This document shows positions 21,184 through 63,695 of a DNA stretch of 64,000 bases, piece after piece. Source of the DNA: Hemiscyllium ocellatum (taxonomy: Eukaryota). Under the pieces are notes generated by a model, which did not search any database, was not told the origin of the DNA, and saw nothing but the letters and a program-made list of their open reading frames with translations. The stretch is from the NCBI RefSeq assembly GCF_020745735.1, contig NC_083409.1, forward strand, positions 18,496,341-18,560,340, written 5' to 3'. The position numbers were made by a program, and so were the translations under genes. Numbering within the stretch: position 1 is the first letter of the stretch; the number at the start of each line of letters is the position of its first letter.

Positions 21184-21232
21184 ATGATTTCGCACATCCA
21201 GCTGATCTGGCCCCTGGAATTCTGTGTCGCAG
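21184..21232 (+). pseudogene. IGKV: Ig kappa (NS4/type III) leader exon
   Basis: MISHIQLIWPLEFCVA-G followed by GT donor at 21233; matches the recalled shark NS4 leader MISHIQLIWPLAFCVAG. Confidence 0.92.
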
Positions 21233-21418
21233 GTACAAATCTCTCTCCTTCCACCTTGAATCTTTCGCTGCTCTCCATTTCACTCCAATTCCACTGACTT
21301 GTGATTGAAGGGAAAATGCTGAAACCAGAGGAATGCTCAGTGTCTCCAACAATCTCTCATTTGACAGGCTCTTTCTGTGAAAGTTCTGACTTCACTGTGT
21401 TTCTCTCTGAGCCCTCAG

Positions 21419-21706
21419 GTATCAGTGAGGACATCATCATGACCCAGTCTCCCCCACTGCTGTCAGTGGGACTGGGCCAGACCGTAACCATCATCTGTAC
21501 GGCCATTAGCAGCTACCTTGCTTGGTACCAGTAGCGAGAAGGTCAGAAACCCTCTCTCCCGATCTACAATGCAGCAACTCAACTCACAGGAGTCTCTGAG
21601 CAATTCACCGGCAGTGGATCAGGGACCAGTTTCACCCTGACAATCAGCAACATTCAGAATGAGGATGTTGCTGACTATGACTGTCAGCAGCATTACAGCT
21701 GGCCTT
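21419..21706 (+). pseudogene. IGKV: Ig kappa V exon, pseudogene (in-frame TAG 21532-21534)
   Basis: AG acceptor 21417-21418; [94 protein letters not shown]. Cys23, Trp35 and Cys88 present. Confidence 0.95.
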
Positions 21707-21734
21707 AACGGTGATACAGGGCCATCCAAAAATC
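21707..21734 (+). promoter_or_regulatory. V 12-spacer RSS, defective
   Basis: Heptamer AACGGTG (consensus CACAGTG), 12-bp spacer ATACAGGGCCAT, nonamer CCAAAAATC (consensus ACAAAAACC). Confidence 0.88.
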
Positions 21735-22128
21735 TCAATATGCACAGCACCACCACCTGTACTAACACATTCCACATTTTTGTGACATATACACAGTTCC
21801 ACCTCCTGCACTGACACATCCACAGTTATATGTAAATGAAATTGAACAAATTACCCCATACCGGGATTGTCACTGTACATGACACACTCCAGTCCCTGTG
21901 GTGTCCACCGCTCACTGAAGGCCTCAAGTTTCCCTCTTGCATTCCATGGCCACATGTGAAGAGCAGCTGCAAGATTTAACATCGAAAAATAAAGTTCACA
22001 AACTGCACAAGCCCAGCTGAACACTACCGAGAGAGACAGAGGGAGGGCAGGGAGAGGGTGAGACTAAGTAAGAGACAGAGAGAGAGAGAAGGAGCGGTTG
22101 AGAGTGATGGAGGGAAGCAGAGAGCTGA

Positions 22129-22167
22129 GGTTTTTGTACAGCCTCTGCACTGGGAGCTCTCACTGTG
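22129..22167 (-). promoter_or_regulatory. J 23-spacer RSS, consensus-perfect
   Basis: GGTTTTTGT 22129-22137, exactly 23-bp spacer, CACTGTG 22161-22167. Confidence 0.97.
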
Positions 22168-22202
22168 GCTTACGTTCTGTAATGGAACCAAGCTCAGACT
22201 GA
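22168..22202 (+). other. IGKJ: Ig kappa J segment with altered FGxG motif
   Basis: LTFCNGTKLRL-(S), donor GTAAGT at 22203; phase-1 splice to C gives ...KLRLSRENSQP. Confidence 0.95.
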
Positions 22203-23234
22203 GTAAGTAAACCTCAATCCTCTGTTATTAACCCTGTCAATACTGAAATACAATTTATAAAACACAAATACTGAATTGTTGAAGTGTTGCAGTGATGGAA
22301 ATGTTTGATTGAGGAACACCGCATCCCATACGGTGTACACCTGTATTTCTTTAGTCCTATAACCCCATTAAAAAGCAAGATATAAGTCAGTAAGTTTTAC
22401 TCACCGTGTGGAGGAGCTCTGTCCATTTGCAGCCTGTGGTCCCATTCCTGCAGCATGGAATGAAATCAGTGAGTAGCCTCCTGCCAGTCTCAGTGTGACA
22501 GACACGGGGCAGATTTTAATGTGAGCTCTGGCTCCCTGTCCCAGTCTCTGATCCCACTGACCTCAGCAGCAGCACAGTAAGACACCGAGCTCCTACCTCC
22601 CCCAGCTTTAACTCTGCTCAATCACATAATCACAGAATTGTCACATTGCACGAGGAGGCCATTCTGCCCATCCTGTCTGAACTGGCTCTCCGAATGAGCA
22701 ATTCACTGAGTGTCATTCTCCTGCCTCCTCCCTGTCACCCTGAACATTGTTGCTTTTCAAATATCAGTCTCATTCCCTTTGGAATGTTTTAATTGAAGTT
22801 GCCTCCACCACGCTATCAGGCAGTGCATTCCACACCTTAACCACTCACTGGCCAAAATGTTGTTCCCCATCTCACTTTTGTGACTTTTCCCAATTGCCTT
22901 CAATCTGTGGTCTCTCAGTCTCAATCCTTTCTCAATTGGGAACATTTTCTTCCTATTTACTGTATCCAGGCCCCTCCGGATTTTAATTCCTCGAAGAAAT
23001 CTCCTCTCAGCCTTCTCCAAAGAAGTCAGTCCCAAATTCTCCAAACTATCTTAATAACTGATATTCCTCACCCCTGGAATGATCTTTGGGAATATTTTTT
23101 GCCATTTCTACAAAATTTCACCTGCTTCCTGAATGATTCACATTATCTATGTCCCTCATGATTTTATTAACCTCTGTATTGTCACCCCTCAGACTCTTAC
23201 ACTTGAGGGAAAACAGTCTCAGCTTTTCCAGCCC

Positions 23235-25560
23235 CTCATAGTCATGGAGTCATACAGCGTGGAAACAGACATTTCAGTCCAACTTGCCTGAGTTAACCAG
23301 ATCTCCTAAATGACCTCATCCCATTTGCCAGCATTTGGCTTACATCCCTCTAAACCCTTCCTATCCATGTTCCCATCCCAATGTTGTAATTTTATCCGCC
23401 TCCGACACTTTCTCTAGCAGCTCGATCCAGACACACACCACCCTCTGTGTGACAAGTTACCGCTCGGGTCCCTTTTGAAACTTTTGCCTCTCACCTTAAA
23501 CCTATGCCCTCTTGTTTTGGACTCCCCTTACCAAGGAAAAGACCTTGGATATACACCTTGTCCATGCCCTTCATGATTTTCTGCACATCCATAAGGTCAC
23601 CCCGAGGCCTTAGACGCTGCAGGGAAAATAGGCCCATTTCTTCAGCCTCTCCCGACAGCTGAAACTCTCCAATTCCTGGCCACATCCTTGTAAATCTTTT
23701 CTGCTGCCTTTTAAGTTTAACAACATCCTTCCTATCTCAGGATGATCAGAATTGTTCACATTATTCCCAAAGTGGCCTCACCAACTGCTGTACAGCTGCA
23801 ACACGATGTCCCAACTCCTATACTCAATGCAGTGACCAATAAAAGTAAGCATACCCAACACCTTCTTCATCTCCCTGTCTACCTGTGACTCCACTGTCAA
23901 GGAATAATGCACCTGCACCTGCACCTTCACCCCTCGCTCTCTTTAGATTAGATTACTTACAGTGTGGAAACAGGCCCTTCGGCCCAACAAGTCCACACCG
24001 ACCCGCCGAAGCGCAACCCACCCATACCCTACATTTGCCCCTTACCTAACACTACGGGCAATTTAGCATGGCCAATTCACCTGACCAGCACATCTTTGGA
24101 CTGTGGGAGGAAACCCACGCAGACACGGGGAGAACGTGCAAACTCCACACATTCAGTTGCCTGAGTCGGGAATTGAACCCGGGTCTCAGGCGCTGTGAGA
24201 CAGCAGTGTTAACCACTGTGCCACCGTGCCACCCATGTTGCTTTGTTGAGCAACACTCCACGGGTCCCAACCATTAACCGTAAAAGTCCTGCCCTGGTTT
24301 GGCTTTGCAAAGTACAGCACTCACATTTATTGAATTAAACTCCATCTGCTATTCCTCAGCCCACTGGCCCAGTTGGTCAAGATCCCATTGTACACTTAGA
24401 CAGCCTTCTTCACTGGCCACAATGCCACCTGAAAATTTATCTGAACATACTCTCACAATTCTGGCCCCTCCTGCCTGTTACATTGCTATTACCCCAGTCT
24501 ATATTCAAAAATTAAAGAGCCATTTATAATGACTCTATCACGTTTGCAAGTATCTGCAAATTCCTTGCATTTGTATTCCTCTGCATCCTTCCCATTGGGT
24601 GGTGACTTATTGACTGCAGTGAAGATTCTGTGGTCCTTGGTGTTCCTCTCTGTTATTCCCTCCTGGCTCCCACAGACCTGCCAAGTTAGTTTAAACCCTC
24701 GCCAACAGCACTAGTAAATCACCCCAAAGGAACTCAGTCCCAGCTCGGTTCAGGAACAACACTGTCTGGTCTGTCCAGGTCCCATCTCCCCCAGACCCAG
24801 TCTCAATGTCCCAAGAATCTAAAGTCCTCCAACCTGGATCCTCTTTCAAGCTTCACATTCACCTGTGTTATCCTCCTATTTCTATTCTCACTTGGATGGG
24901 GCACTGGGAGCAATCCGGAGATTCCAATTTTTGAGCTCCCAGTGCTCATTCCCTCCAGAGCCCCCTAAATTCTGAATGCAGGACCACATCCCTTTCCTCC
25001 CTCTGTCATTGGCACTGATGTTGACCATGACTGCTGACTGTTCCCCCTCTCCCCTCAGGGTGCTCTGCAGCCGCTCAGAGACATCCTTGACCCTGGCACC
25101 AGAGAGACAACACACCATCCTGGATTCCCATCTATTACTGCAGAAACACCTATCGATTGCCCTCACTCTTGAATCTCCTCTCGCTATCCTTCTTCCTTGT
25201 GCCCCCCCGTACAGCGGAACCCTCCACCTTGGTGCCAGGGACTTGGCTCTGGCTGCACATCAGAGATGAATCATCATTCTCATCAGGATTCTGAACTGAA
25301 TCCCAGTTGGAGTGTGTGATGCACTCAGGGGATTCCTCTACTACCTGCCTGGTCCTTTTGGACTGTCTATTGCTCCCCCATTCCCTCTCTCCCTGCATAT
25401 TCTGAAACTGTAGAGTGACCACGTCTAGAAACATGTTCTCCATGGAGCTCTCAGCCTCACGGACGCTCCGCACTGACACCAGCTACTGGTCAAGCTCCGG
25501 AACCCGGAGTTCCAACTGCTGTCACTGACCACATTTCCTGCACTTATGGTATTCCAGGAG
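23235..25560 (-). mobile_element. Internally deleted CR1 (3' RT part 23235-24420; ORF1 part ~24700-25560)
   Basis: ORF 24888-25166 SRMVCCLSGARVKDVSERLQ...VMVNISAND (ORF1 esterase); RT 3' motifs at 23491-23685. Confidence 0.85.
23944..24234 (-). mobile_element. Young HE1-like V-SINE with small V-domain deletion
   Basis: Reverse complement of the 13985 copy; lacks the segment between the two GGAGGAAACC repeats. Confidence 0.9.
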
Positions 25561-26681
25561 CTAGGAAGCATTCTGAAGTTCCCACCTAAATGCGCACTCT
25601 CTTCACCCTTTGATCATCTCTTGGCAAAGTTCTGATGACAAACAGCTCCAGTAGGGCTCACAGTCCACTGGGTTCAGTGTTCCAGGGTTTTGGGGAAACT
25701 CTCCAGAAGACTTTAAGAAATAGGTGCAGAAATCAGCCATTCAGCCCATTGAATCTGCTCTGCCATTTGATCTTGGCAGATATGCTTCTCAACCCCATTC
25801 TCCTGCCTACTCCACAGGAACGTTCGATCCCCTTAACTCTCACGAACCTATCTATCTCTGTCTTAAATACACTCAGTGGCTTGGCTTCCACTGCCCTCTG
25901 TAACAATGAGTTCCACAGATTCACCACCCTCTGGCTGAAGAAATTCCTCCTCATTTCAGCTCGAAAGGGCTGGCCCTTCATTCTGAGGCTGTGCCTTAGT
26001 TACCGAGTCTCTCCTGTTTTTGGAAACATCTTCTCCCCATCCACTCTATCCAGGCCGATCAGTATTCTGTAAATTTCAATAAGATCCCTCCTCATCCTTC
26101 TAAACTCCAGCGAGTACAGACCCAGAGTCCCCGAGCACGCCTGATATGATAAGTCCTTCATCGTCTGGATCATTCTTGTAAACCCCTCCAATGCCAGCCC
26201 ATGGTTTCTTAGAATATGGGTCCAAAATCTGTCCACAATATTCCAAATGCAGTCTGACCAGAGCCTTACACAGCCTCAGCAGTACATCTCTGCTCTTGTA
26301 TTCTGGCCCTATTGAAATGAATGCTATCATTTCATTTGCCTTCCCAAGCACAAACTGGACCTGCCTGTTAACCTGAAGGGAATCCTGAATGAGGTTCGTG
26401 CTTTAGATTTCCAAAAGCTTTTCTTATTTAGTAAACAGTCTTTGCATCTCTTCTTCCTCCCAAAGTGCATACCCTCACACTGTCACACATTGTATTCTAT
26501 CTGCCACTTCTTTGCCCACTCTCCGAGTCTATCCAGGACCTTTTAGAGCCTTCCCACTTCCTCAACACTATCTGTCCCTCCACCTATCTCATGTCACCTG
26601 CAAACTTAGCAACAATGTCTTCACTTCCTTCATCCAGATTGTTAATGTATAACGTGAATATTAAGGTCCCAACATTTTGTC

Positions 26682-26754
26682 GGGGAATTAGCTCAAATGG
26701 TAGAGCGCTCGCTTAGCATGCGAGAGGTAGTGGGATTGTTGCCCACATTCTCCA
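26682..26754 (+). tRNA. tRNA-Ala(AGC), probably a pseudogene copy
   Basis: 73 nt GGGGAATTAGCTCAAATGGTAGAGCGCTCGCTTAGCATGCGAGAGGTAGTGGGATTGTTGCCCACATTCTCCA; anticodon AGC 26715-26717; acceptor, D, anticodon and T stems pair. T loop ATTGTTG instead of ATCGATG (B box damaged); TTTT at 26761-26764. Confidence 0.9.
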
Positions 26755-26834
26755 CAGTGCTTTTCCTGGGGACACGCTTGAGACGCAGGCAGTGTGACCT
26801 CGCGCGAAGCCTGCTGTATGGCTCCTGTCTTTAA

Positions 26835-27135
26835 GGGCGGCACGGTGGCACAGTGGTTAGCACTGCTGCCTCACAGCGCCAGGGACCTGGGTTCAATTCC
26901 CGCCTCAGGCGACTGACTGTGTGGAGTTTGCACATTCTCCCCGTGTCGGCATGGGTTTCCTCCGGGTGCTCCGGTTTCCTCCCACAGTCACAAAGATGTG
27001 CGGGTCAGGTGAATTGGCCATGCTAAATTGCCCGTAGTGTTAGGTTAGGGGTATGGGTGGGTTGCGCTTCGGCGGGTCGGTGTGGACTTGTTGGGCCAAA
27101 GGGCCTGTTTCCATACTGTAAGTAATCTAATCTAA
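26835..27135 (+). mobile_element. Young HE1-like V-SINE forming the 3' half of a tRNA-Ala/SINE composite
   Basis: Same young subfamily; ends AGTAATCTAATCTAA followed directly by AACATT, which also lies at 26671-26676. Confidence 0.9.
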
Positions 27136-29479
27136 AACATTGACCCCTACATGACTCTACCAGTCACCAACGGCCATTTTTCCTCACTCTCTGCTTTATG
27201 CCAACCTGCCAGTCCTCAGTCCATGCCAGTGCCTCGGCCCTCACACTTTATGCTCTTATCTAATGTCAAAGGCCTTCTAGAAATCCAAATACATTACTTC
27301 CTTTGACTCTCCTTTGTGTGAATGGCTCATTGCGTTCTCAAAGAATTCTAACAGATTTGCCAGGCATGACCTCCCCTTGATGAAGCCCTAGTTTACACTT
27401 GCACCTCCAAGTCCTCTGCAATTTCATCCTTAAATTGAAGTCTAAACCCTTACCAACAACTGAGTCCAGGATAACTGGCCAATAATTTCCCATCTTCTCC
27501 CTCCCTCCCTCCCTTCCTTCTTAAACAGGGCTGCTATGTGAGCCACTTTCCAGTCCCTTGCCCCCATCAAATCCCTGCCCACCACACTGTCATACCCTGA
27601 CTCCATTGATTCCTGAAAGATCATCTCCAATACCTCCATAATTTACTCAGTGATCTCCTTCAGAACACACTCATGTAGTTCATCTAGTCTGGGTGATTTA
27701 TCCACATTCAACCTTTCAGCTTTGATTCAATTCCTCTGCTATTTCTTCACTTCCTATAATACTTTCTCCAGCCTCATTTTCCGGCGATCCAATGTCTATT
27801 TTTGTCTTCCTCTTGCTTTTTATACATCTGATAAAACTCGTGCAATCTTCTTTTGTATTCCTGGCTAACTTACCCCCACATTTCCCCCTCTCCACCTTTA
27901 ATGCTTTTTTATTTATCCTCTCCAGGTTTTTAAAGGCTTTTAACCCTCTGGCTTCCCACTTTTCTCTATCACATTGCGTGTTTTTTTCTTTTGCTTTTAT
28001 GCTGTCCGTGACTTCCCTCACCAGCCATGGTTGCCTTGTCCTCCCCTTAGTATGTTTCTTCTTTTTTGGGATGAATTCCTACTCTGCTTCCTGAATTACC
28101 ACCAGAAACTCTGCTGTTTGCTGCCCCACCATTTTACCTGCGTGGCTCCCCTTCCAATCAATTCTGGCCAGCTCCTTCCTCATGTCTTTGTCGTTACCTT
28201 TACTCAACTGAAATACTGATCCATCTGATTGCAGCTTCTCCCTCTCAAACTACAGCCGGATTTCTATCATATTATGGTCACTTATCCAGAGGGATACTTT
28301 AACCTTCAGCTCATTAATCAAGTTTGCCTCATTCCACATCACTGAATCCAGACCTGCCTGTTCCATAATGGCTCAACCACAAGCTGCTCCAAAAACCATC
28401 TCGTAGACATCCATGAAATCTTTTTCTTGAGACGCGCTACCCAGTCCACCTATCCATTGAAGTCTGCCCTGACATTTTGTATGCGGCTTTTCTGTCTCCT
28501 GATTGATTTCCTTCCCCACACCCTGATTACTGCTTGGAGACCTGGACATAACTTGCATCAGATTCTTTATTTCTGGCGGTTCCTCAACTCTACCCACACA
28601 GATTCTACACCTTCTGACTCAAAATCACTTCTTGCTTTGATTTAATTTAATTTCGTACTAACAAGGCAACTCTTGCCCGTCAACCCATCTACCTCTCCTT
28701 TTCATAGGACATGTATTCTTGGATATTTAGTTCCCAGCCCAGATCCCCTTACATCCATGTCTCTGTGATACCCACGACATCGTACCTGCCAGATTCAATC
28801 TGCACTACCAGCTCATTGCGTATACTGTGTGCTTTTATGTACAACACATTCAGCCCTGCATTGACTGCCTTCCTTCTCATCATTATCCTCTTATCTGCTG
28901 TGCTTGATGCTCGACTCTTGTTCCTTTCTGTACTCTCTATTGTAGTATGTCTTATAGAAACTTGAATAACCTCTCTTGAGCCCTCCTCCACTTTAACTAG
29001 TTTAAATTCCTTGGAAACTCAATTTACCTCGATTTATGGCATCACTTTGTCTACCTTACTCGGAATGCTTCGTGCATTTAGATACAAACCCTTTAAGTTT
29101 GTTCTATCATTGATTTTCCCTGCACGTTTATGGTTCCTTTAATACTCAAAAATTCTATCCCTTCCTTTTATTTTCTGATAACAATCAATCCCATCCGTAA
29201 CCAGCAATCCTACCTTCTCCTTTACCTTCCATTTTCTCATTTTCCATCCAACTGAACCAAATTCCTTTCTCTTTGGGTTGAGTTCAGGACAATATTTATC
29301 CGTGGACCAACATCGTGAAGAATGCTCTTTGACCTCATTGCTTCTAGTGGGATCTTGCTGTGAAGAAACTGGCTGTCCCTTTCCTGACATTGCAACAGTG
29401 ACTTGTTTTAAAACAAAATGTAAATGACTTTGGGAGAGCCTGAGGTGTTAGGGGCTCGATTGAAATACAATTACAGTTA

Positions 29480-30150
29480 TGGAGATGTACAGCACGGAAA
29501 CTGACCCTTCAGTCCAAGTCATCCATCCTGACCAGATACCCTAAATTAATCTAGTCCCATTTGCCAGCATGAGGCCCATGTCGCTCTCAACCCTTCCTAT
29601 TCATATACCCATCCAGATGGCTTTTTAAATATTGTAATCATACCAGCCTCCACCACTCCCTCTGGCAGCTCATTCCAAAAATGCACCACCCTCTACATGA
29701 AAACACTACATCTTAAGGTCCCTTTTAAATCTTTCTTCTGTCACGTTCAATCTATGCCCTCTAGTTCTGGACTCCCCAACTCTGAAGAAAAGATCTACTC
29801 TATTCACCATATCTATTCCCCTCAAGATTTTATAAACCACTGTGTGGTCACCCCTCAGCCTCCAACAATCCAGGGAAAATAGTCTCAGTCTATTCATCTT
29901 CCTCCGATAGCTCAAACTCTCCAACTTTGGCAACACCCTTATAAAACTTTTCTGAAGCATTTTAAGGTTCACAATATTTTTCCTACAGCAGGGAAACCAG
30001 AATTACACACCGTATTCCAAAAGTGACCTAACCAATGTCTGACACAACCACAACAGTTCCCAACTCCAATACTCAATGCACTGCCCAATAAAGGAAACCA
30101 TCCCAAGTTACTTCATCACTCCCCTACCTACCTGCAACTTCACTTTCAAG
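29480..30150 (-). mobile_element. CR1 3' fragment
   Basis: ORF 29706-29972 LSYRRKMNRLRLFSLDCWRLRGD...VYKILRG. Confidence 0.85.
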
Positions 30151-30179
30151 GAACATTTTTTTTGATTGAACTGGGAGTC

Positions 30180-30410
30180 TTTCAGATGTGAAAGGTGCCA
30201 TTCCATGGCACTGTTGGATGAAGAGCAGGCAGTTCCTTCTGGTGGCCTGGTCAATATTTATCCCCCAATAAAAATCACTAAAAATCTATTTCTCTGCTAA
30301 TTATCACACTGTGTTTGGGATCTCACTGTGCAAAGTCTGCTGGAAAGAGCCATTGGGACATCCTGAGTTGGGGACAGGTGCTACACAAATGCAGGTCTTT
30401 CTTTAAGGTT
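30180..30410 (+). mobile_element. DeuSINE-like (Deu domain) SINE fragment
   Basis: CCATGGCACTGTTGGATGAAGAGCAGG...CCTGGTCAATATTTATCCC resembles the recalled Deu core; related fragments at ~29330-29460, ~49800-49930 and ~59000-59060 (-). Confidence 0.55.
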
Positions 30411-31247
30411 AGAGTCTCCTGATCCTGAACCTCTCCCATTGTCTGCGCACTCTCACCTTCCAGGAGGCATGGGGTCATTAGGAGCAGTGACCCTGCCTGA
30501 CCCCGGGACACTGAGGCTCTTTGCAGCTTCACCCTTGATCTCAGCCCAGTGTGGTGTGCAGCAAGGTTTGAAATGTATTCTGGAACATTCTACACAGACA
30601 CCCCAATGTGACTCCTTCCTGAAATGTTTGGATCCAAGTCTGCTCCAATGTTCTCGGATAAAGTTCTCCTCATCTGTGGGTAATCCAAGGTTTGTTAAAG
30701 AGGGATCGAGCTCCATCCCACTTTTTAGCTCTTGCTCCATAGCTCTGGAGGTTTTGATGTTCTAAGTGAATATCGAAGTGTTTTATCAATGTGATGAGGG
30801 TTTCTGCCTCTCCCACCCTTTCAGACAGTGAGTCCCAGATCCCATCAGCCTCTGGGTGAAAACAATTACTCCTCAATTCCCCCCGAACCCTGTCCCCAAT
30901 TCATTTCAATCTCTCCCCATGGTTATTGCCCTCTCTGCTGATGGAAATCAGTCCTTCCTACCAATTCTATCTCGGCCCTCATCATTTTACACGCCTTGAT
31001 CAAATCTCCCCTCAGCCTTCTCTGTTCCAAAGAAAACAGTCCCAGCCAAACCAATCATTCCTCAAAGCTAAAACTCCCCATTCCTGACAAAATCCTCCAC
31101 TGTCCCCATCACTAGGGGGACCATATCCTTCCTGTAATGTGGTGACCAGAACAGTACACTGTTCTCTCACTGCGCCCTAACTGGGGTTTTATACAGTTCC
31201 AGAATAAACAAATTTCTTGCTTTCGCTCTCAACCAAAAAGGAGACAA

Positions 31248-31595
31248 GGGAGGTGATGGTCTAATAGTATTATTGCTGAACTGTTAATCCAGAGATCCAG
31301 ATAATATTCTGGGGACCCGGGTTAGAATCCTGCCACAGCAGATGGTGGAATTTGAATTCAATAAAAAAATCTGGAATTAAGAATCTAATGATGACCATGA
31401 AACCATCGTTGATTGTCAGGAAAAAGCCATCTGATTTCCTAATGCCCTTTAGGGAAGGAAACTGTCATCTTTACCATGTGACACCAGACCCCCAGCAATG
31501 TAGTTGACTCTAAAATGCCCTCTGGAGATTAGGGATGGGCAATAAATGCTGCCGATCCAGCAATGCCCTCATTCTGTCAATGGAAAAAGAAAAAC
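31248..31595 (+). mobile_element. Second tRNA-derived SINE family
   Basis: Head with B box GGGTTAGAATCC; core CAGATGGTGGAATTTGAATTCAATAAAAAAATCTGGAATT; tail GGGCAATAAATGCTG. Partial copies at ~41170-41420, ~43888-44125 and ~49575-49705. Confidence 0.75.
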
Positions 31596-32898
31596 AGTTT
31601 ATCCCATGTGTCTTCTGAACCACCTCACTGACCTGCATTCATTAATCACCATGGCCACATCTTCCACCTCCACACACATCTGACTTCCAGCCTCAAGCTG
31701 ACGAGAGACATTCCTTCATTATCTGAGAAATGGACAGAAATATTAAACACAGGAGCATCAGTAGGCCATTCGGCCCCTCAAGCCTGCTCCACCATTCAAT
31801 ATGATCATGGCCGATCAGGCAACACTGTCCCCTGTTCCTGCTTGCTCCCCACATTCTTTGAACTCATTAATCTTAAGAACTGTATCTAATTCCTTCTTGA
31901 ACACATACCGCATCTAATTCCCTCATGCTGGTAAATTGATGAGAAGTATTGAGTTGTTTTTTGACACAATGATCCGTTGGGCCTTTTGGGTCGCTCTGAC
32001 TCTGACTCTATTATTAAATGTTATGAATAACTGGGTACCAAGGACTGATCCCTGTGGTACCCCAACTGGGAAATATCTGCCATTCAGAAAAAGACTCGCT
32101 CTTCCTGTCCTGTCTGCCAACCAGTTCTCAATCCATGTCAGTACATGACCCCAATCCTCTTGTTTGTTGGGATTTCTTCGATTTAGTTGGACATAGTTAA
32201 TCCTGTCTTTGCCTTCCTCAGATCCTGTTCAATGCCACCCCTGCATTTCCAATCCTCCTCTGGGCTTTCTGCAGATAACTCCAGATAACCAACATCACCT
32301 TCCCTGTTTGGTCTTCCCTACTCTGGCTGCCTTTTGACATCCCAGGCTGAGAGTCTAGATTAGGGAGTCCCACCCTTACTCATTGTGGGAACAGATTCTG
32401 AACAATCTCTGTCTTTTCTTTTGAGGGATTCCACTGCCCTGACACTGATTTCACATGATGGCGTTGGTTCCAGTCCACTTTTACTAAATTATCGCACAGT
32501 TTAGTAAAATAATTCATTCCCAAGTGAAAACGTTAACACTTGCTGCATGGTTCTCCATTTCCATCCCTACTCTCAATCTCACTGAGTTCTGATCACTGTC
32601 ACTAAACTGGTCCCCCATTGAGAGCCCTTCCAGCTGCCCACATTCATTCCCTAAACAAGAGTCCAAACCTGTTCCTTGTCTTTCCCCATCACCTTTTCAG
32701 GGCAATTACGGATGAGAAATAAATGCTGGCCCTGCTCGTGACACTCACTCCCAAGAAGCAATTTAAACAATACTTGTTTTTTTTTGTCGGGTTTGGTAGG
32801 TATTGGATACAAATGTTCAAACATTTTACCAGTGAATGTTCTGAGAGTTGAAGTTTCTTCAAATGGCAGGGATTAAAATTGTTTCTTTTGTCTTTCAG

Positions 32899-33227
32899 GC
32901 CGTGAGAACTCTCAGCCCAAGCTGACCCTGCTGCCCCCCTCCCTGGAGCAGGTCAATGCCAAGGGCACTGCCACCCTGGTGTGCTTTGCCAATCACTTCT
33001 ATCCCGATGAGCTGGAGGTGCAGTGGAAGAAGGATGGTGCAGTCATTTCGGACGGGGTTCAGACCAGCAACTACCTGCGAGCTTCGGACAGCACCTACAG
33101 TGTCAGCAGCCTGCTGACCCTCTCTGGGTCTGACTGGGAGTCCAACGCTCGCTTCTCCTGTGCCCTCACCCACGTGACCCTCCCCTCTCCCCTCAGCAAG
33201 AGCATAACGAGATCAGAATGTGTGTAG
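32899..33227 (+). CDS. IGKC: Ig kappa (NS4/type III) constant exon, open and intact
   Basis: TTTCAG acceptor; (S)RENSQPKLTLLPPSLEQVNAKGTATLVCFANHFYPDELEVQWKKDGAVISDGVQTSNYLRASDSTYSVSSLLTLSGSDWESNARFSCALTHVTLPSPLSKSITRSECV*. Both domain Cys, the Trp and the penultimate interchain Cys are present. Confidence 0.97.
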
Positions 33228-34875: not shown

Positions 34876-35339
34876 AGTGGGGCAGGATCATAGTTGACAG
34901 AATTTACAGTGAAATTGAGATGGCAACTGAGAAAGGTGAATATTGAGAGTGTGTTCTCAGTAAGGGAGGGATTTCAAAGGCAGTGGGCACTGTGCTCCCT
35001 AATGTGTTGCCTGATTACAAGGGGATTTTCTGGATCCAGGGTCATTGCAGTAGTGGCTGCCTGCCCAGCCAGTGCTGACTACCCATAGTCATATTTCAAT
35101 GGTCAATTAGCTCTACACTATGTGCAGTAATATTACCTTACAGAGAGGGGAGCTGTCTGAACGAGGGTGGTTGAATTCTTGCAGCCCCAAGAGGGGTTGC
35201 AGTGGATTAATGAAGGGTACGACTAACATGAAGGTGCCACCTTCTCTCCCCCTGCCTCAGCTGTGGTGACCCTTGGATTAAACTCACCACCATTTGGCTC
35301 TGTCTGTAATGAGTGAGTGGGACTATGCTCTTCTGGGAT

Positions 35340-38993: not shown

Positions 38994-39101
38994 GTGATAC
39001 AAATGTAAGTTCCTTCTTTCCATTCTAGCCCTGAAGCATGCATGTGGTTCTGTCTCATATCCACTCAAGAGATGGCAACCCTTTGAAGACAGGAGCAGCC
39101 T

Positions 39102-47659: not shown

Positions 47660-47750
47660 GGGTTATCCTGATGAAGGAGCAGCGCTTCGAAAACTTGTGA
47701 TTTCAAATGAACCTGTTGGGCTAGAGCCTGGTGTTGTGTGACTTCTGACT
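47660..47750 (+). mobile_element. Penelope-type terminal repeat with minimal hammerhead core
   Basis: CTGATGA 47668-47674, A, stem II GGAGC-AGC-GCTTC, GAAA 47689-47692, then ACTTGTG...AACCTGTTGGGCTAGAGCCTGGTGTTGTGTGA. Confidence 0.7.
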
Positions 47751-48777: not shown

Positions 48778-49290
48778 TGTACAGGAGTTGGGAGGTCATG
48801 TAGCAGTTGTACAGGCCACTGTTGGAATATTGTGTGCAATTCTCGTCTCTTCCTATTGGAAAGATGTTGTGAAACTTGAAAGGGTTCAGGAAAGATTTAC
48901 AAGGATGTTGCCAAGGTTGGAGGATTTGAGCTACAGGGAGAGGCTGGACAGGCTGGGGCTGTTTTCCCTGGAGCGTTGGAGGCTGCGGGGTGACCTTATA
49001 AAGGTTTACAAAATTATGAGGGGTATGGATAGGATAAATTGGCAAAGTCTTTTCCCGGGTGTCGGGGAATCCAGAATGAATGGGCATAGGTTTAGGGTGA
49101 GAAGGGAAAGATATAAAAGAGACCAAAGGGGCAAATCTTTCACACAGAGGGTGGGATGTGTATGGAATGAGCTGCCAGAGGAAGTAATGGAGGCTGGTAC
49201 AATTGCAACATTTAAGAGGCATCGGGATGGGTATATGAATAGGAAGGGTTTGGTGGGATATGGGCCGGGTGGTGGCAGGTGGGATTGATT
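48778..49290 (+). mobile_element. Relatively young CR1 3' fragment
   Basis: ORF 48761-49288 LERVQERFTRMLPRLEDLSYRERLDRLGLFSLERWRLRGDLIKVYKIMRG. Confidence 0.9.
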
Positions 49291-51769: not shown

Positions 51770-53975
51770 TGGCGTTATCGCGAATAATATGAAATTGAGT
51801 AATTTTGGTGTGGGGGGGGGCAGCTGACAGGGATGTTCCCTGTTGCCCCTACTGTTTACCTTGGTACTTGAACCACTGGCAGGGACTGTCTGAAAAGACC
51901 CTGAAATAACGGCACCGAAGGTGGGAGTTGTGGAAACAAAAATCACTCTCTATACGGACAACGTCCTCCTGTTTTTAGCTAACTCTGAAAAGTCCATACC
52001 CTGGCTAATAAAAAAACATTAAATTATTCGTCAACTTTTCAGGATACAGAATAAATTTTCCAAAATCGGAAGTCCTGCCTGTGGGGGGATTGGTGCAGGT
52101 ACTGAAGCTGGAGGACGGAATGGAGTTTCCTTTTAGATGGTCACAGAAAGGTTTTCCCTATCTGGGAATTTTTATTACCCCTCACTTCCCGCAACTGTAT
52201 GGAGCTAACCTTGTGTCGCTGTTTGAGAGGGTAAAGCAGGACTTGCAGCGATGGAAGGGAATACCCAGATCATGGCTCGGCCGTATAGCCTTGATTAAAG
52301 TGAATGTTGTTCCTTGGTTGTTATATCCTGTGAGGATGCTCCCTTTGTTATTACCCAACCAGGTGCTGCGGAGGTTTGCGGGATGGCTTGGGTCATTTAT
52401 TTGGTGCTGTCGGCACAACTTAATTAAATTTACCAAGTTGCAACTTCCGCAGGATATGGAGGGTGGGCGGTGGACTTCCCAGATCTGAAGAGTATCAAAG
52501 CAGCACCCTGTTGCTATATGTAGGTGAATGGGTGCGTAATGACTCAAAGTCGATGTGGCTTGATGCAGAGGCCTAGCAGGTGAGATGTCCCTTTAGAAAC
52601 GTACTGTTCATGGACAAGATGAGATCGGTAGGTGCGCATTGTGAAAGTCTGATTATCATAAATACGGTAAAGATGGAGGATAATGCGGCAGGGTGGAGAC
52701 TATTTGTAGTTACCCCGTTAGTGGGAGCCCCAGGATTTAGACTGGGATCAAAGGACTCCAGCTTCAGAGCATGGGAGCATAATCGAATCCCCTGTCTGGG
52801 AGATTTATTTGACTGAGGGGTCTTGATGTCTTTTCGCCAATTAGGTCAGAAATACGAAATCCCTAATTGGGATCTTTTCCGATATTTCCAGGTTAGGGAT
52901 TACATACAGAAGAAGACTACGTTTTTGGCCCAGCCCAACAAGTCGGATATAGAATGAAGAGTGCTCCGATGAGGGGGCACTCTTTCAGTTAGTACCTCAT
53001 ATCATCTGCAGAGAGGGAATGCCGTGGGGGAATTGGAGAGAGTCAGGGAGATTTGGAATCAGGAGGTAAGGGAAGAAATCTCATCAGAAATGTGGGACAA
53101 TGTATGAGGGAATGTAAAAAAAAATTCAATCTACAATAAGGCACAAGCAATGCAATTGAAGATCCTCCCCAGGACCCAAATGGAGCCAGAGAGGTTAGCA
53201 AAGTTTAAGAAAGGGTCTTCCCCGAAATGTCCCAAATGTAAAAACAGTATTGACATCCTTACACATTGCTTTTGGTCCTGTTACAAGATCCGTGAATCCT
53301 GGGGGGGGCCATAGTGAATGAACTGGAGACAATCCTGGGAATGGAAGTTTGGGAGGATCTGGTGTCTCTCCTTTTGGGAACGACCAAAACTTCCCTCTTT
53401 GGGTGAGCACGGGAAGAGGTTATTCAACATTCTTACACATTGTGTGAGGAAGGACATCCTAATGAATTGAATATCAGCAAAGCCTCCAGGTCTTTCAAGG
53501 TGGCACAGACTTGTGATGGAGCACGTCCCTCAAGATTACCTGACAGTATGGGGCACCACGGAATGGAGCAATTTTATAAGACATGGCGGCCCTTTCTAAT
53601 TTACATCAACATGGATCTGTCGGCAGTACTGATTAGGGCCTTTATAGAGGCACGAGGGCTGTATGTGGTGGTCCGGGGATCACGGGAATTTGGTGGGTGG
53701 TCTCATAAATATGGGTATAATCACTGTTGTTCCTGTGGACAGGAGCTTTGATGGAGAGTGCGGCAAGTGGAGTCGTGTAATATAGTACAAGTAGTGCAAT
53801 TTAATTTTAATGGATTGTACTTAAAGTTAGTGTTATTTTATTTAATTTGAGTTTGTGCTGATTTGTTTTAAGTTAAGCAAAATTTGAGACAACTGTATCT
53901 TGAACAGTAGCCGGCGGTTTATTCACATTACTGTATTATAAGATAATTATTTTCAATAAATATTTACTAAAAAAA
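51770..53975 (+). mobile_element. 5'-truncated degenerate L1-clade LINE
   Basis: RT motifs QGCSLLPLLF and ITLYTDNVLLF; FPYLGIFI and WLGRIALIK (ORF 52081-52488); C-terminal CPKC...HCFWSC; AATAAA 53955-53960 and A-run 53969-53975. Confidence 0.88.
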
Positions 53976-54823
53976 GAGGAACATTCGAGAAAATTAACAG
54001 ACAGAAGCACCATGCAATAGAAATGATCAAGAGTGGTGAGAAAGGAGGGAGAAAAAGAGATTCCTGTAGTATGGAGAGAGAGAGAGAGAGCAAAAGAGAA
54101 TGAGTTCTGAAGGGGAGAGAGAGAGAGTTCTGAATGAGAGAGAGAGAGAGAGTTCTGAAGAAGTTCTGAATTAGTGCAAGTGATCTCAAAAGCTGCTCAA
54201 AGTTTTCAACGTTTTCCTGAAAATCACAAATACAGTCCATTTACATGAATAAAAATCAATTGTCCTTTCTGAAATAATTTAAAACCAAAAAATAAAATCA
54301 AGACTTATAATGAAGTAAGTGCAAGTATTTAAAATCCTCAATACTTCTGCCTTCCACTTCAGTCATGCAGATATAGTCCTCCTCACTCAGAGGGAGTATT
54401 CAGTGTCTGGTATCAGCCATTGTTCAGAGTCTCAGAGCTAACATACACCAAACACATATCATCGCACCACTAGATATACTTTTTAAAAAGGTAAACGTAG
54501 GTGTAAATACAATAACAAAATTAAATGTGCAATCTTCTTTGAATTCAAGTCCATGCTACAGTTTGGATAAATAAATGGGATCGGGTTGTATATAAATAAG
54601 ACAGGAGAAAGGTTGGCACTTTTGGTATCCACATCCTGCCAGTCGGCTGACTCCAGTAAGGATCGATATCCCAAACCACCTACTTATTGAGGAAATTCTA
54701 TGCCAGATGTCAAAACTCAATCAGAGAGAGGAGTTTAGAGGCCGAGGTGGATTCTCCTCTGCTCGGGTCATGAGGTTTGGTTTTTTTCTGGAGTCCACAA
54801 GTTGGCCGATGGCATGGCCCATG

Positions 54824-54988
54824 TTAGGATAACATGAGTCTTAACTGTTGCCCCTGAATCTGATTCAGTACATTTATTGTGTCTTTTATCAGAACTTCAA
54901 AAATATAATCTGCCAACTGCATCTTCACACAAAGCTCATCCTCATCATAATTCACCCATTGGGCTTCTTCCTCATAAAGCTCTTGAAC
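54824..54988 (-). CDS. CEP350: CEP350 terminal coding exon
   Basis: Acceptor TTTTTTCTGGCAG; VQELYEEEAQWVNYDEDELCVKMQLADYIFEVLIKDTINVLNQIQGQQLRLMLS* (TAA 54824-54826). Closely matches the recalled human CEP350 C-terminus VQELHEEEAQWVNYDEDELCVKMQLADGIF. Confidence 0.92.
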   Translation of the reverse strand, partial: VQELYEEEAQWVNYDEDELCVKMQLADYIFEVLIKDTINVLNQIQGQQLRLMLS

Positions 54989-57618: not shown

Positions 57619-57741
57619 CAAAATATGGTCCACCCGATCACGTTGTTTGGTGCCAAATTTCTTCAACTTCTGCCAAGTCGTCTTCTGATGTTGCTCTTCA
57701 TTCAACCCAAATAACTTCAAAACTTCATTAGAAATGAAGAT
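57619..57741 (-). CDS. CEP350: CEP350 coding exon (penultimate)
   Basis: Acceptor CTTCTACCCACAG, donor GTAGGT; 123 nt, phase 0/0; IFISNEVLKLFGLNEEQHQKTTWQKLKKFGTKQRDRVDHIL. Confidence 0.92.
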
Positions 57742-60490: not shown

Positions 60491-60499
60491 GAGACAATT

Positions 60500-61195
60500 T
60501 AACCAATGGCCCTTGACATTCAATGGTATTACCATCACTGAATCTTCCACAATGAACATCATGGGGGTTATCATGGACCAGAAACTCATTTGGACTCATT
60601 ATATAAATACTTTGGGCTACAAGGGCAGGTCAGAGGCTTGGAATACTGTGGTGTATAACTCACCTCCTAATTCCCCATAGCAAATCCACCGAGTACAAAG
60701 CACAAGTCAGGAGTTTGATGGAATCTGCCCCACTTGCCTGAATGAGTGCAGCTCCAGTAACACACAAAAAGCTCGCCACATCCAAGGCAAAGGAGCCCAC
60801 TTGATTGGCACCACATCCGCAAGCAGCCATGCCCTCCACCACCCTCCACTCAGTAGCAGCAGTGTGTACAATCTACAAGATGCATTGCAGAAATTCAGAG
60901 ATCTTCAGCCAGATCCTCCAAATCTGTGACCATTTAGATCAAGAAGGACAAGAGCAGCAGACCGCCACCTGCAAGTTCCCCTCCAAGCCACTCATCATTC
61001 TGACTTCGAAAAATATCATTGTTTCTTCAGGATTGCTGAATCAAATTCCGGAAATTCCCTCCCGAAGGGCATTGTGGGTCTACCTACAGCTCATGGACTG
61101 CAGTGGTTACAAAAGATAGCTTACCATGTTCTCAAAAGCAACTAGGATCGGTGAATAAATGCTGGCCAGCCGGCGATGCCCAGACCCTCTGAGTC
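60500..61195 (+). mobile_element. 3' end of the second LINE family
   Basis: YKAQVRSLMESAPLA-type C-terminus; tail GAATAAATGCTGGCCAGCCGGCGATGCCC. Related pieces at ~50130-50495 (+) and ~47760-47990 (-). Confidence 0.7.
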
Positions 61196-61544
61196 ATTTA
61201 AAAAATGGTCATTGAGGAGTTTAGAATTAAAATGGGGTTCATTGGTACTCAATGAGCATCGAGGAATTTTTTTTGTTCATTCATGAAATGTGGATGTCAC
61301 TGACTGGCCAGCCCTTATTGCACCTTCCTGGTTGTCCTTGAGAAGATGGTGCAGAGCTAGACCCACAATCTCATTAGGGAGGGACTTCTAAGAAGCAGTG
61401 ACAGATTTCCAAGTCAGGATAGTGACCACTGTTTACAAGTTGAGTCACTCACTTACTCAATCTACATACTTTAACTCCAACCAGCATCACGTTTGTCACA
61501 TTATTACTGACAAATAGGAAAAAAGGATTACATGGAGTTATTAC

Positions 61545-61691
61545 CTTCACTTCATTTAAATTCTGTGGGTTCCTCGCTCGTTTGAAGAACAAAGAGCTAA
61601 TTTGGCTTGGCTTCATCCACGGGGCTGGGCTGGCATAGAGGTCGTCAGAAAAGATGTCAGCAAAGATTTCCCTCGTCACATTAAAGATAAG
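61545..61691 (-). CDS. CEP350: CEP350 coding exon
   Basis: Acceptor TTTTACTACTTCCAG, donor GTAATA; 147 nt, phase 0/0; LIFNVTREIFADIFSDDLYASPAPWMKPSQISSLFFKRARNPQNLNEVK. Confidence 0.9.
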
Positions 61692-63455
61692 CTGGAAGTA
61701 GTAAAAGAGTAACAAAGAAAATATTATATTAGATATGTCCTCTCCACCCAAAAAAAAGCTTGTTAGATCACGACAGTGAAAATAAAAGGGAATACTGTTC
61801 AAAATATATAAAATAACAACTGTTTGATTCACGATCTGAATCAAGGATAAATTTAGAATTTCATTGATTGCAGTAGAGAAGGCAAAAGAGAGATGACAGA
61901 AGGGGTTTAAAACGATTGCAGAACTACCAAGGCTAGGTGCAGATGTATTAGACAAGATTACCGACATAATACTAAGGAAGGCACCACAACATAAAAGCAG
62001 GCAAATCTTTGAAACAAAATGAATGACATCTGTGGGACATGCTGTAAATAGAAAACAAACTATCATGGCTCCAATTATTACCTCCTAAAATTCGACCAGA
62101 GGGTTGGAGGGCAGCGAACTCCTCATTCAATAAGAAGAAAAACAGGAATTTCTCAATCAGTTAGTTTTGTGTCATTTGTTGGTAAATTAAGAGTAAACAG
62201 CATGGAGTGAAAGACGAGCAGTTAAAGAGACAATAGCAATTAGCATGAATTTCTAATTAGCAGGTTGTGAACTAGCAAGCGATTTGACAAGGCTGTATTA
62301 GTAAAGGAGCAGATTAGTGGGAAAAAAGTGTACATGGTTTACATGGATTTTCAGAAAGTATTTCAAGTAGTTACCTCTGAGAAGACCAAAGGCAAAACTC
62401 AGGGGCACCTCAAATGAAGGGGAGCACAGTCAAGTGAATAGAGGTAGTTGGGAAAATGCAGGTCAGGGTAAAATAAAGATTTCACACAAGAAAGGTGTGG
62501 AGAATGGAAGGGCTCCACAGGAGCCCATACTCAGATCGTCCTTAATTGTTATCGTAATAAACACAATCTTGACTTGGGAATTTAAGAGAAAGGAATCAAA
62601 TGATTCCAACTTGGGTTGAAGGGACAGAGATGGAACTGTACTGCAGTGACAGTTACAGAAGAATATTTACCGAAAGATGGAATTGAAGTTAAGAGTGGGA
62701 TGAAGTAATACATTGTGTGGATAAGAAAAGGAATTACACCTGAAATGGTAAGATCCTAATCAGATGAGAGCAAAGGCCACATAGACACAAACAATTACAG
62801 CCACGTTAAGCTGCATAAGATCTTAGAATACTTTGGTCAACTTTGGGAATCTCAACATCGTGCAAATTCTCAAGATGTTATCAGGAAAAGAGGTACAGAC
62901 ATGATCACAGATTGAGAAGTTCAACCTTTCAGGCTTTCTTTATCTGAAAATTACGGAATGACCTGTGATTCTAGCTTCTAGATCAAGATTCTAGAGAGTT
63001 TTAAGAAGGTGAATAATAATCAAATATTGTATTATCAACCAATGGAAACAGCAATAGAAAGACAGAAACGATAGAGAAAAATTTGAAAAAAAAACACTGA
63101 GTGGCTGGAAGGGACACTATATATTATGTAAATAGAAACGGAATCTACAGATTCTCAGACTGGGCAAAGTTATGACAGATGGGATTTAACGGATAACAAT
63201 ATGATGAGGATGAGGATGATAAATTAATAATGGGAGAGTACAAACAGTGGAGGAGAAAGGGGCTTTGGATTTTTAGGGAAGGGGCAAAATGGTAAATTGA
63301 ATTCAATGCAGTCATCAGCATCAAGATAATGTTTTTAACATGCTCTGTTATACATATCATCAATCAGAGCTGCAATGGAGCACTCTTAACCCATATGTTT
63401 CTTGCTTAACAAAGAAAAAATAATTTGGTTTTCAAATGCAAAATCTGGGTCTCAC

Positions 63456-63695
63456 CTCACAATAAGCTCTTCTGCTGACACTCTCATCATCCTTCCATTT
63501 ATAATTCCCGAAGTCTGGGGGTATTTGCAAATCCCCCAAATCATGGCCAAGTTCCTGCCATTTGTACAGCTCCTCAGCCGCTCCATGAACCAGTGTCACA
63601 ATCTCGACTGCATCTTCAGGAAAAGCAAAGTTAATTTCCCCTTGGATTTTTCGGGGCACATCTTTTCGGGACTGGGGCTCCTGCACTGGGCTGCC
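63456..63695 (-). CDS. CEP350: CEP350 coding exon
   Basis: Acceptor TACTTTGCAACAG, donor GTGAGA; 240 nt, phase 0/0; GSPVQ...LVHGAAEELYKWQELGHDLGDLQIPP...ESVSRRAYCE, compared with recalled human LVHNAAEELWKWKELGHDL. Confidence 0.9.

What the first reader, a model, noticed from the sequence alone, without database searches (positions are those of the whole stretch)
21184..63695. Ig kappa cluster physically linked to RNASEL and CEP350 (human 1q25, MHC paralogon)
Order seen: V-J-C (+), then RNASEL (-), then CEP350 (-), within ~43 kb. In human both genes are on 1q25 with MR1 between them, part of the 1q21-25 MHC-paralogous region, while mammalian IGK lies on 2p11 beside RPIA. A kappa cluster on this block could support the proposal that antigen-receptor genes were linked to the proto-MHC. 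Alternatively it is a dispersed orphon-like cluster, which would fit its decayed V.
Basis: partly seen in the sequence, partly recalled or inferred. Interest (0 to 1): 0.72.

Follow-up and report, generated by a model that had tools for sequence, protein, structure and literature searches.

The report
Shark kappa duplicon with RNASEL fragment
A decayed shark antibody kappa light-chain mini-gene really does lie beside pieces of RNASEL and a CEP350-like gene, but the RNASEL piece is a dead, truncated copy, so this window cannot by itself show an ancient link between antibody genes and the proto-MHC.

Summary

- **The kappa cluster is a pseudogene.** V has an in-frame TAG and a spoiled RSS heptamer. 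J reads FCNG instead of FGxG. The C exon is intact.
- **"RNASEL" is only a fragment.** It holds the last two of six coding exons, with a lost splice acceptor (AG to CG) and a premature TAG. No ankyrin or kinase exon exists anywhere in the window.
- **The fragment is a genomic copy.** Window 34981-45144 is collinear, at 84-89% DNA identity, with the 3' end and downstream flank of the intact RNASEL gene of Chiloscyllium punctatum.
- **The CEP350-like exons are intact**, but I could not name them through any database.
- **The tight adjacency is not general.** RNASEL has no Ig exon and no match to these exons within 10 kb in a skate, a sawfish or a sevengill shark.

Earlier unchecked notes from this scan report the same triad at three other places on the same chromosome piece. 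My reading is one unit of an amplified kappa array carrying passenger fragments. A location in a 1q25-like block is plausible. Descent from the proto-MHC is untested.

The parts
21184..21232 (+). Kappa V leader exon (ATG at 21184, donor GT at 21233)
   Evidence: Read directly from the sequence.
21419..21705 (+). Kappa-type V exon, pseudogene. In-frame TAG at 21532-21534 (WYQ*), short CDR1, YDC instead of YYC.
   Evidence: Pfam V-set E 4e-4 on the second half. PDB hits to kappa V regions at about 1e-19 to 1e-20.
21707..21734 (+). V recombination signal: heptamer AACGGTG (first C lost), 12-bp spacer, nonamer CCAAAAATC
   Evidence: Read. The importance of the CAC start of the heptamer for RAG cleavage is established knowledge, not tested here.
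22129..22167 (+). J recombination signal: nonamer GGTTTTTGT, 23-bp spacer, heptamer CACTGTG (intact)
   Evidence: Read.
22168..22202 (+). J segment LTFCNGTKLRL. The FGxG glycine is replaced by Cys (TGT at 22178-22180). Donor GTAAGT at 22203.
22203..32898 (+). J-C intron of 10.7 kb, swollen by interspersed repeats, including a tRNA-Ala-derived element at 26682-26755
32899..33227 (+). Light-chain constant exon, intact. Acceptor AG at 32897-32898, stop TAG at 33225-33227.
   Evidence: Pfam C1-set E 1.6e-21, sequence, PDB.
34981..39101 (-). Copy of the 3' flank of RNASEL, lying tail to tail with the C exon
   Evidence: blastn against the C. punctatum RNASEL locus L001: 35818-39835 at 84% and 34981-35829 at 89%. 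The second match reaches the end of that scaffold.
39102..39222 (-). RNASEL last coding exon (residues 774-812 of P0126) with its stop codon
   Evidence: tblastn 95% identity, E 3e-18. PDB RNase L 4o1o E 0.003. Alignment.
44805..44929 (-). RNASEL penultimate coding exon, disabled. Acceptor AG changed to CG (44931-44930). AAG changed to TAG at 44812-44810.
   Evidence: tblastn 93% identity, E 1.5e-18. Base-by-base alignment to L001. Pfam Ribonuc_2-5A E 0.005.
44930..45144 (-). Remnant of the upstream RNASEL intron. Homology to the true gene ends at about 45144, roughly 0.7 kb upstream of the exon in L001 coordinates.
45145..54823 (.). Repeat-rich spacer (reverse-transcriptase ORFs at 46.4-47.2, 48.7-49.3 and 52.0-52.5 kb) joining the RNASEL fragment to the CEP350-like tail
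54824..54988 (-). CEP350-like terminal exon (54 codons plus TAA)
   Evidence: Atlas neighbours carry DUF4378. RNA-like runs of six coded organisms hold 6-10% of its words.
57619..57741 (-). CEP350-like exon (41 codons, AG/GT borders, phase 0)
61545..61691 (-). CEP350-like exon (49 codons, AG/GT borders, phase 0)
63456..63695 (-). CEP350-like exon (80 codons, AG/GT borders, phase 0). The gene continues beyond the window.

Best explanation
The window shows one unit of a segmentally duplicated kappa light-chain mini-locus array in a hemiscylliid shark. Earlier notes from this scan name the epaulette shark.

The unit contains three things:
1. A V-J-C minicluster that can no longer rearrange or encode a chain. 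The V has a stop and a broken heptamer, and the J has FGxG changed to FCNG. The C exon is still open.
2. Tail to tail with it, a roughly 10-kb genomic copy of the 3' end of RNASEL. It holds the last two coding exons plus the downstream flank. It is cut off inside an intron and carries a lost splice acceptor and a premature stop, so it is a dead passenger.
3. The intact last four exons of a CEP350-like gene.

**Inferred history.** A founder kappa cluster lay a few kb downstream of the true RNASEL. Repeated duplication of that neighbourhood spread kappa clusters together with pieces of their non-Ig neighbours.

**Shown:** the anatomy, the defects, and the DNA-level origin of the RNASEL fragment.

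**Inferred:** the founder arrangement, the multi-copy nature of the unit (which rests on earlier unchecked notes), and the CEP350 identity.
For: - RNASEL is reduced to residues 732-812 of 812. No ANK or kinase exon is anywhere in the window.
- These exons are 93-95% identical, not identical, to the annotated H. ocellatum RNASEL protein P0126, so a second copy exists.
- Two disabling changes relative to the intact C. punctatum gene: AG to CG at the acceptor, and AAG to TAG.
- Window 34981-45144 is collinear with the C. punctatum RNASEL 3' end, intron and 7.8-kb downstream flank at 84-89%. This marks a DNA duplication, not a retrocopy. The flank runs on to the kappa C exon 1.75 kb further.
- Only 1.9% of the stretch's 31-mers occur in that true locus, yet two other coded organisms hold 21-23% of its sampled words. 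This suggests that related species carry a much closer copy of the fragment.
- V, J and C defects and signals.
- Earlier notes list the same triad at +1.18, +2.03 and +5.78 Mb, and shortened CEP350 copies at -0.73 and -5.35 Mb. These are leads, unchecked here.
Against: - I could not read the rest of the chromosome, so the copy number of the unit and the position of the true RNASEL and CEP350 relative to this window rest on earlier unchecked notes.
- The C. punctatum scaffold ends before any C exon would appear, so the founder arrangement is inferred.
- The CEP350-like exons are intact here and could belong to the working gene.
Confidence: 0.72

Rival explanations
1. Ancient linkage. Kappa genes have sat in the block orthologous to human 1q25, part of the chromosome 1 MHC paralogon, since early jawed vertebrates. 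This would support an origin of antigen receptors in the proto-MHC.
For: - The flank of the true RNASEL is continuous with a kappa cluster.
- In the skate, RNASEL lies tail to tail with a DUF3694 + RabGAP-TBC gene (RABGAP1/RABGAP1L type) 7.4 kb away. First-reader notes report RABGAP1L-type exons interleaved with kappa clusters in this genome.
- RNASEL, CEP350 and RABGAP1L are all on human 1q25. This last point is from my own knowledge.
Against: - No Ig C or V exon and no match to these exons lies within 10 kb of RNASEL in Amblyraja, Pristis or Heptranchias.
- What is linked here are duplicated fragments.
- Published analyses place the Ig/TCR origin on the chromosome 9/12/14 paralogue, some IgL beside TCR alpha-delta, and lambda on the chromosome 9 paralogue.
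- One lineage's location can equally be a secondary landing site.
Confidence: 0.12
2. Orphon. This is a single decayed kappa cluster that was dispersed away from the working array and landed by chance near RNASEL and CEP350.
For: V and J are both damaged. The J-C intron has swollen to 10.7 kb with repeats.
Against: - Earlier notes place kappa clusters from 9.9 Mb before to 5.4 Mb beyond the window on the same piece, and the same triad at several other places.
- The neighbours are themselves duplicated fragments, not resident genes.
Confidence: 0.1
3. Assembly artefact. The joins between the Ig cluster, the RNASEL fragment and the CEP350-like exons were created by collapsing or mis-joining repeats.
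For: The region is repeat-rich and apparently multi-copy. The joins at 33228-34980 and 45145-54823 have no outside support.
Against: 10 kb (34981-45144) is collinear with an independent assembly of another species. Eight runs from two studies of organism A hold 42-47% of the words of 39080-45079.
Confidence: 0.05

Closest known systems
Cartilaginous-fish Ig light-chain miniclusters (kappa / type III, NS4-like)
   Same: - One V, one J and one C within a cassette, with about 0.46 kb between V and J.
- V signal with a 12-bp spacer and J signal with a 23-bp spacer.
- Kappa-like V sequence and a C1-set C exon.
   Different: - This copy is dead: a stop in V, a spoiled heptamer and FCNG in J.
- Its J-C intron is 10.7 kb.
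- No named shark isotype sequence was retrieved. The homologue search returned only four unnamed or mislabelled partial proteins.
RNASEL (2-5A-dependent ribonuclease)
   Same: The last two coding exons and the intron between them match the shark RNASEL gene in sequence, order and spacing: 5.6 kb here against 5.4 kb in C. punctatum.
   Different: There are no ankyrin repeats, no pseudokinase and no first half of the KEN domain. A splice acceptor is lost and there is a premature stop. It cannot make RNase L.
CEP350 (centrosome-associated protein 350)
   Same: - An open C-terminal coding region of four exons.
- The last exon's nearest Atlas clusters carry DUF4378 (PF14309).
- PF14309 is one of two Pfam families used to pick out plant TRM proteins.
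- A paper says the TRM motif also occurs in human CEP350.
- Earlier follow-ups called sister copies CEP350.
   Different: No named database hit was obtained here. The CAP-Gly domain would lie outside the window. Whether this is the working gene or one of the shortened copies is unknown.
Non-Ig genes and gene fragments carried inside duplicated antigen-receptor loci (for example non-Ig genes and pseudogenes interspersed in mammalian IGL and IGH loci; from my own knowledge)
   Same: Antigen-receptor cassettes multiplied by segmental duplication carry neighbouring sequence with them.
   Different: The passengers here are RNASEL and CEP350-like pieces. Paper searches found no description of them beside shark light-chain genes.

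Membership tests
Ig kappa light-chain minicluster | V-set exon with split leader, J segment and C1-set exon in one cassette on one strand | tested here: met
   Leader 21184-21232, V 21419-21705, J 22168-22202, C 32899-33227.
Ig kappa light-chain minicluster | Kappa-type signal geometry (V 12-bp spacer, J 23-bp spacer) and kappa-like V sequence | tested here: met
   Spacers counted. The best PDB matches of the V are kappa chains at 1e-19 to 1e-20. Sigma shares this geometry (from my own knowledge), and no shark isotype reference was available.
Ig kappa light-chain minicluster | Open V and J and cleavable signals (a functional gene) | tested here: not met
   TAG at 21532-21534, heptamer AACGGTG, J with FCNG.
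RNASEL | N-terminal ankyrin repeats and pseudokinase domain | tested here: not met
   Motif scan and tblastn with three shark RNASEL proteins find nothing upstream of residue 732.
RNASEL | KEN ribonuclease domain, complete and open | tested here: not met
   Only the last 81 residues are present. There is an in-frame TAG and a CG in place of the acceptor AG.
RNASEL | Derivation from the RNASEL locus (shared introns and flank) | tested here: met
   Collinear at 84-89% with the C. punctatum locus L001 over 34981-45144.
CEP350 | Significant similarity to named CEP350 proteins | tested here: inconclusive
   The length filter left no candidates. Pfam and PDB gave nothing. The only lead is the Atlas neighbourhood of DUF4378/TRM-type clusters.
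CEP350 | CAP-Gly domain | not testable with these tools
   It would lie upstream, beyond position 64000.
Human 1q25 / chromosome 1 MHC paralogon block | Several resident orthologues of 1q21-25 genes, including paralogon hallmark genes, around the locus | tested here: inconclusive
   The window holds only one RNASEL fragment and a CEP350-like tail. The skate RNASEL has a RabGAP-TBC neighbour that I could not assign to RABGAP1L rather than RABGAP1. No hallmark gene was examined.
Human 1q25 / chromosome 1 MHC paralogon block | Kappa-RNASEL adjacency conserved in other chondrichthyans | tested here: not met
   No Ig exon within 10 kb of RNASEL in Amblyraja, Pristis or Heptranchias. Larger distances could not be tested.
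Orphon (dispersed solitary Ig segment) | Isolated from the main array | not testable with these tools
   The chromosome outside the window is not readable. Earlier notes argue against isolation.

The most novel reading that the evidence does not exclude
The whole kappa array of hemiscylliid sharks grew out of one cluster seated in the RNASEL-RABGAP1L interval of the block orthologous to human 1q25. That seat would be ancestral rather than a late landing site. One light-chain isotype would then sit on the chromosome 1 MHC paralogon, beside lambda on the chromosome 9 paralogue and other Ig/TCR genes on the chromosome 14-like region. That is the pattern expected if antigen-receptor genes were already in the proto-MHC before the two genome duplications.
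Probability: 0.1. Interest if true: 0.75.

Novelty: new variant of a known kind. Interest (0 to 1): 0.42.

Why it matters
[quoted passage not shown] This window shows how one such array grew: by copying a kappa cassette together with pieces of its neighbours.

The RNASEL fragment has a sharp breakpoint and two private defects. It can serve as a marker for tracing the order and age of the duplications, and for locating the founder cluster.

The window also gives a caution for synteny arguments about the proto-MHC. Gene fragments scattered through an amplified array can mimic conserved linkage many times over, yet they count as only one event.

Tried and rejected
**Read laying**
- No read-level test of copy number, joins or expression was therefore possible.

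**Naming the CEP350-like exons**
- Homologue search with the 102-aa piece: no candidate within the length filter.
- Atlas on exon A: nothing useful.
- PDB: only chance hits to AimR.
- Pfam on whole pieces and on exact exons: nothing.
- Findings search by sequence: blank.

**Naming the Ig isotype**
- Homologue search with the Ig C exon returned only four partial proteins. Two are mislabelled as bacterial, and none carries an isotype name.

**Fetching other loci**
- The look-up of encoding contigs gave no DNA for S. canicula, H. ocellatum, C. plagiosum, Mustelus and S. torazame, because the files are too large.
- It had no record for P0007 and P0006.

**Matches considered and rejected**
- A weak RNASEL match at 42127-42041 (residues 660-688, E 2.4): out of order with the real exons.
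- Window 45321-45400 matching L001 10116-10194, which would imply an internal deletion that keeps the RNASEL 5' end: a second match at 48365-48411 marks it as a dispersed repeat.
- Window 52241-53941 matching L001 15540-17134: opposite orientation and carries a reverse-transcriptase ORF, so a LINE.
- RabGAP-type exons were sought in the window with the skate neighbour. Only repeat matches were found.
Full report
**Observation**

The window is vertebrate DNA rich in interspersed repeats, with no N runs.

*The Ig cluster on the + strand*
- A leader exon starts with ATG at 21184 and ends at 21232.
- The V exon runs from 21419 to 21705.
- The V recombination signal is AACGGTG, a 12-bp spacer, then CCAAAAATC.
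- About 0.46 kb further lies a J signal: GGTTTTTGT, a 23-bp spacer, then CACTGTG.
- The J segment runs from 22168 to 22202 and has a GTAAGT donor.
- A C exon runs from 32899 to 33227.
- The C exon is a clear C1-set domain (Pfam E 1.6e-21).
- The second half of the V matches mammalian kappa V regions in PDB at about 1e-19 to 1e-20.
- The 12/23 spacer geometry is the kappa arrangement.

*Why the cluster is dead*
- V carries an in-frame TAG at 21532-21534 (WYQ*).
- The heptamer has lost its first C.
- CDR1 is short, and the YYC motif reads YDC.
- J reads FCNG where FGxG is expected.
- The C exon is intact.

**The RNase L part**

Two stop-free pieces on the - strand hit RNase L in PDB at consecutive positions: 640-668 and 675-711 of 4o1o. 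A whole-library search with the last-exon piece returned an 811-aa shark RNase L, P0001. It has ankyrin repeats, a kinase-like domain and the Ribonuc_2-5A domain. That protein led to RNASEL proteins of 14 chondrichthyan species, including Hemiscyllium ocellatum (P0126) and Chiloscyllium punctatum (P0125).

tblastn of these proteins against the window finds only two exons:
- residues 732-774 at 44929-44801, 93% identity;
- residues 774-812 at 39221-39105, 95% identity.

Nothing matches residues 1-731, and a motif scan finds no ankyrin or kinase signature in any frame.

Base-by-base alignment with the intact C. punctatum gene shows three changes in the penultimate exon:
- its acceptor AG has become CG;
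- a lysine codon AAG has become TAG (44812-44810);
- Leu has become Gly in the conserved LLKFIRN stretch.

The window therefore holds a disabled 3' fragment of RNASEL. Its exons are similar but not identical to the species' annotated RNASEL protein, so it is an extra copy.

**Origin of the fragment**

The C. punctatum RNASEL locus was fetched as L001 (scaffold BEZZ01001581.1). It has six coding exons. blastn shows the following matches:

| Window | L001 | Identity | Content |
|---|---|---|---|
| 43369-45077 | 38967-37241 | 84% | penultimate exon and intron |
| 45078-45144 | 36780-36714 | 91% | short continuation |
| 35818-39835 | 46215-42275 | 84% | last exon and flank |
| 34981-35829 | 50766-49916 | 89% | flank, ending about 50 bp from the scaffold end |

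The intron between the two exons is 5.6 kb here and 5.4 kb there. This marks a genomic duplication, not a retrocopy. It begins inside the intron about 0.7 kb upstream of the penultimate exon and includes at least 7.8 kb of RNASEL's downstream flank.

In the window that flank continues for another 1.75 kb into the kappa C exon, tail to tail. The simplest reading is that the true RNASEL also has a kappa cluster a few kb downstream, and that duplication of this neighbourhood carried part of RNASEL along. An earlier first-reader note reports such a tail-to-tail pair about 5.8 Mb away. I could not check it.

**Age of the copy**

Only 1.9% of the 31-mers of 39080-45079 occur in L001, and 0.08% occur elsewhere in the window. 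Yet runs of two other coded organisms hold 21-23% of the sampled words, against 42-47% for the window's own organism. A share of about one fifth corresponds to roughly 5% divergence. Related species therefore seem to carry a copy much closer to this fragment than the true RNASEL locus is. If so, the duplication predates their split. The organisms are coded and no reads could be laid, so this remains an inference.

**The CEP350-like part**

Four exons on the - strand all have AG/GT borders and are all in phase 0. Together they encode 224 residues ending in TAA:
- 63695-63456
- 61691-61545
- 57741-57619
- 54988-54824

They are intact. I could not obtain a named match:
- The homologue search is limited to proteins of similar length and found no candidate.
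- Pfam and PDB gave nothing.

The one lead comes from the Atlas. The terminal exon's nearest clusters (scores 0.91-0.93, 203-212 shared features) are eukaryotic clusters, some carrying PF14309 (DUF4378). PF14309 is one of the two Pfam families used to pick out plant TON1-recruiting-motif proteins. That motif "is also found in human CEP350". It is not a membership test.

RNA-like runs of the window's organism hold only 10% of the words of the terminal exon plus 350 bp downstream. That is about the same as RNA-like runs of five other organisms (6-8%), while DNA runs hold 57-63%. So the exon is conserved across species. This copy may not be the main expressed gene, but the evidence is weak.

**Other species**

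The intact RNASEL loci with 10-kb flanks were readable for three species:
- Amblyraja radiata (L002)
- Heptranchias perlo (L003)
- Pristis pectinata (L004)

None has an Ig C or V exon or a match to the CEP350-like exons. In the skate, the tail-to-tail neighbour 7.4 kb downstream is a 1048-aa gene with DUF3694 and RabGAP-TBC domains, the RABGAP1/RABGAP1L type. I could not tell which of the two it is.

First-reader notes report RABGAP1L-type exons interleaved with kappa clusters elsewhere on this chromosome piece. For S. canicula, H. ocellatum, C. plagiosum and Mustelus, only gene lists were returned. No other called gene lies within 10 kb of RNASEL in any of them. Ig segments would not necessarily be called as genes, so this says little.

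**Context from this scan**

These notes are unchecked leads.
- Kappa clusters are noted from 9.9 Mb before to 5.4 Mb beyond this window on the same piece.
- One follow-up speaks of a roughly 200-copy array.
- "CEP350-like, RNASEL-like and Ig kappa side by side" was noted at +1.18 Mb and +2.03 Mb, RNASEL with an Ig cluster at +5.78 Mb, and shortened CEP350 copies at -0.73 and -5.35 Mb.

The scan has therefore met this triad before, elsewhere in the same genome.

**Literature**

Searches found no paper on shark light chains with RNASEL or CEP350.
- A 2025 paper finds all shark IgH isotypes and some IgL genes beside TCR alpha-delta (a chromosome 14-like region) and a lambda cluster on the chromosome 9 MHC paralogue. 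It says the distribution of miniclusters is not well known.
- A 2023 paper concludes that Ig/TCR genes arose on a precursor of the chromosome 9/12/14 paralogue, with the chromosome 1 paralogue on a separate chromosome.

**Reading**

The physical linkage is real at the level of this assembly, but it is the signature of a duplicon. A kappa cassette was copied together with a piece of RNASEL and the tail of a CEP350-like gene.

It does suggest that the kappa array of this shark lineage grew beside the true RNASEL, in a neighbourhood whose members are on human 1q25. The human map positions are from my own knowledge. Whether that seat is ancestral or a later landing site cannot be decided here. The three other elasmobranch RNASEL loci show no Ig exon within 10 kb, which argues against a conserved tight adjacency. 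It says nothing about linkage at megabase scale.

**Limits**

- The rest of the chromosome was not readable.
- CEP350 identity, the copy number of the unit, and the two unsupported joins (33228-34980 and 45145-54823) remain to be tested.

Noticed in passing
window 26682-26755 (+): ARAGORN calls a tRNA-Ala (AGC) inside the J-C intron. An earlier first-reader note describes it as part of a retroposed tRNA-SINE unit. The neighbouring 26.8-27.1 kb stretch matches many dispersed copies in the C. punctatum locus.
   Followed up: partly
window 8874-9088 and 14071-14285 (+): Two 215-nt direct repeats, 97% identical and 5.2 kb apart, bracket reverse-transcriptase-like ORFs at 10.2-12.4 kb. This looks like a fairly young retroelement with terminal repeats, 7-12 kb upstream of the kappa V.
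   Followed up: no
proteins P0129 and P0130: The closest database proteins to the shark C exon (84% and 78% identity) are filed as partial proteins of Aeromonas veronii and Salmonella enterica, on contigs of 507 and 990 bp. These are almost certainly shark DNA contaminating bacterial assemblies.
   Followed up: no
L002 31490-34115 (Amblyraja radiata CM021375.1): The skate RNASEL lies tail to tail, 7.4 kb from a 1048-aa DUF3694 + RabGAP-TBC gene (RABGAP1/RABGAP1L type). This may be the ancestral neighbour that kappa clusters separate from RNASEL in hemiscylliid sharks.
   Followed up: partly
window 39102-39222 and 44805-44929 versus flanks: The two dead RNASEL exons are about 96% identical in DNA to the C. 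punctatum gene, while the surrounding intron and flank are 84%. The sample is small (about 240 nt). The gap may reflect a period of constraint or gene conversion after duplication.
   Followed up: no
window 45321-45400 and 48365-48411: Two short stretches match (91% and 85%) the same 80-bp piece next to the first exon of C. punctatum RNASEL. It is probably a short dispersed element.
   Followed up: no
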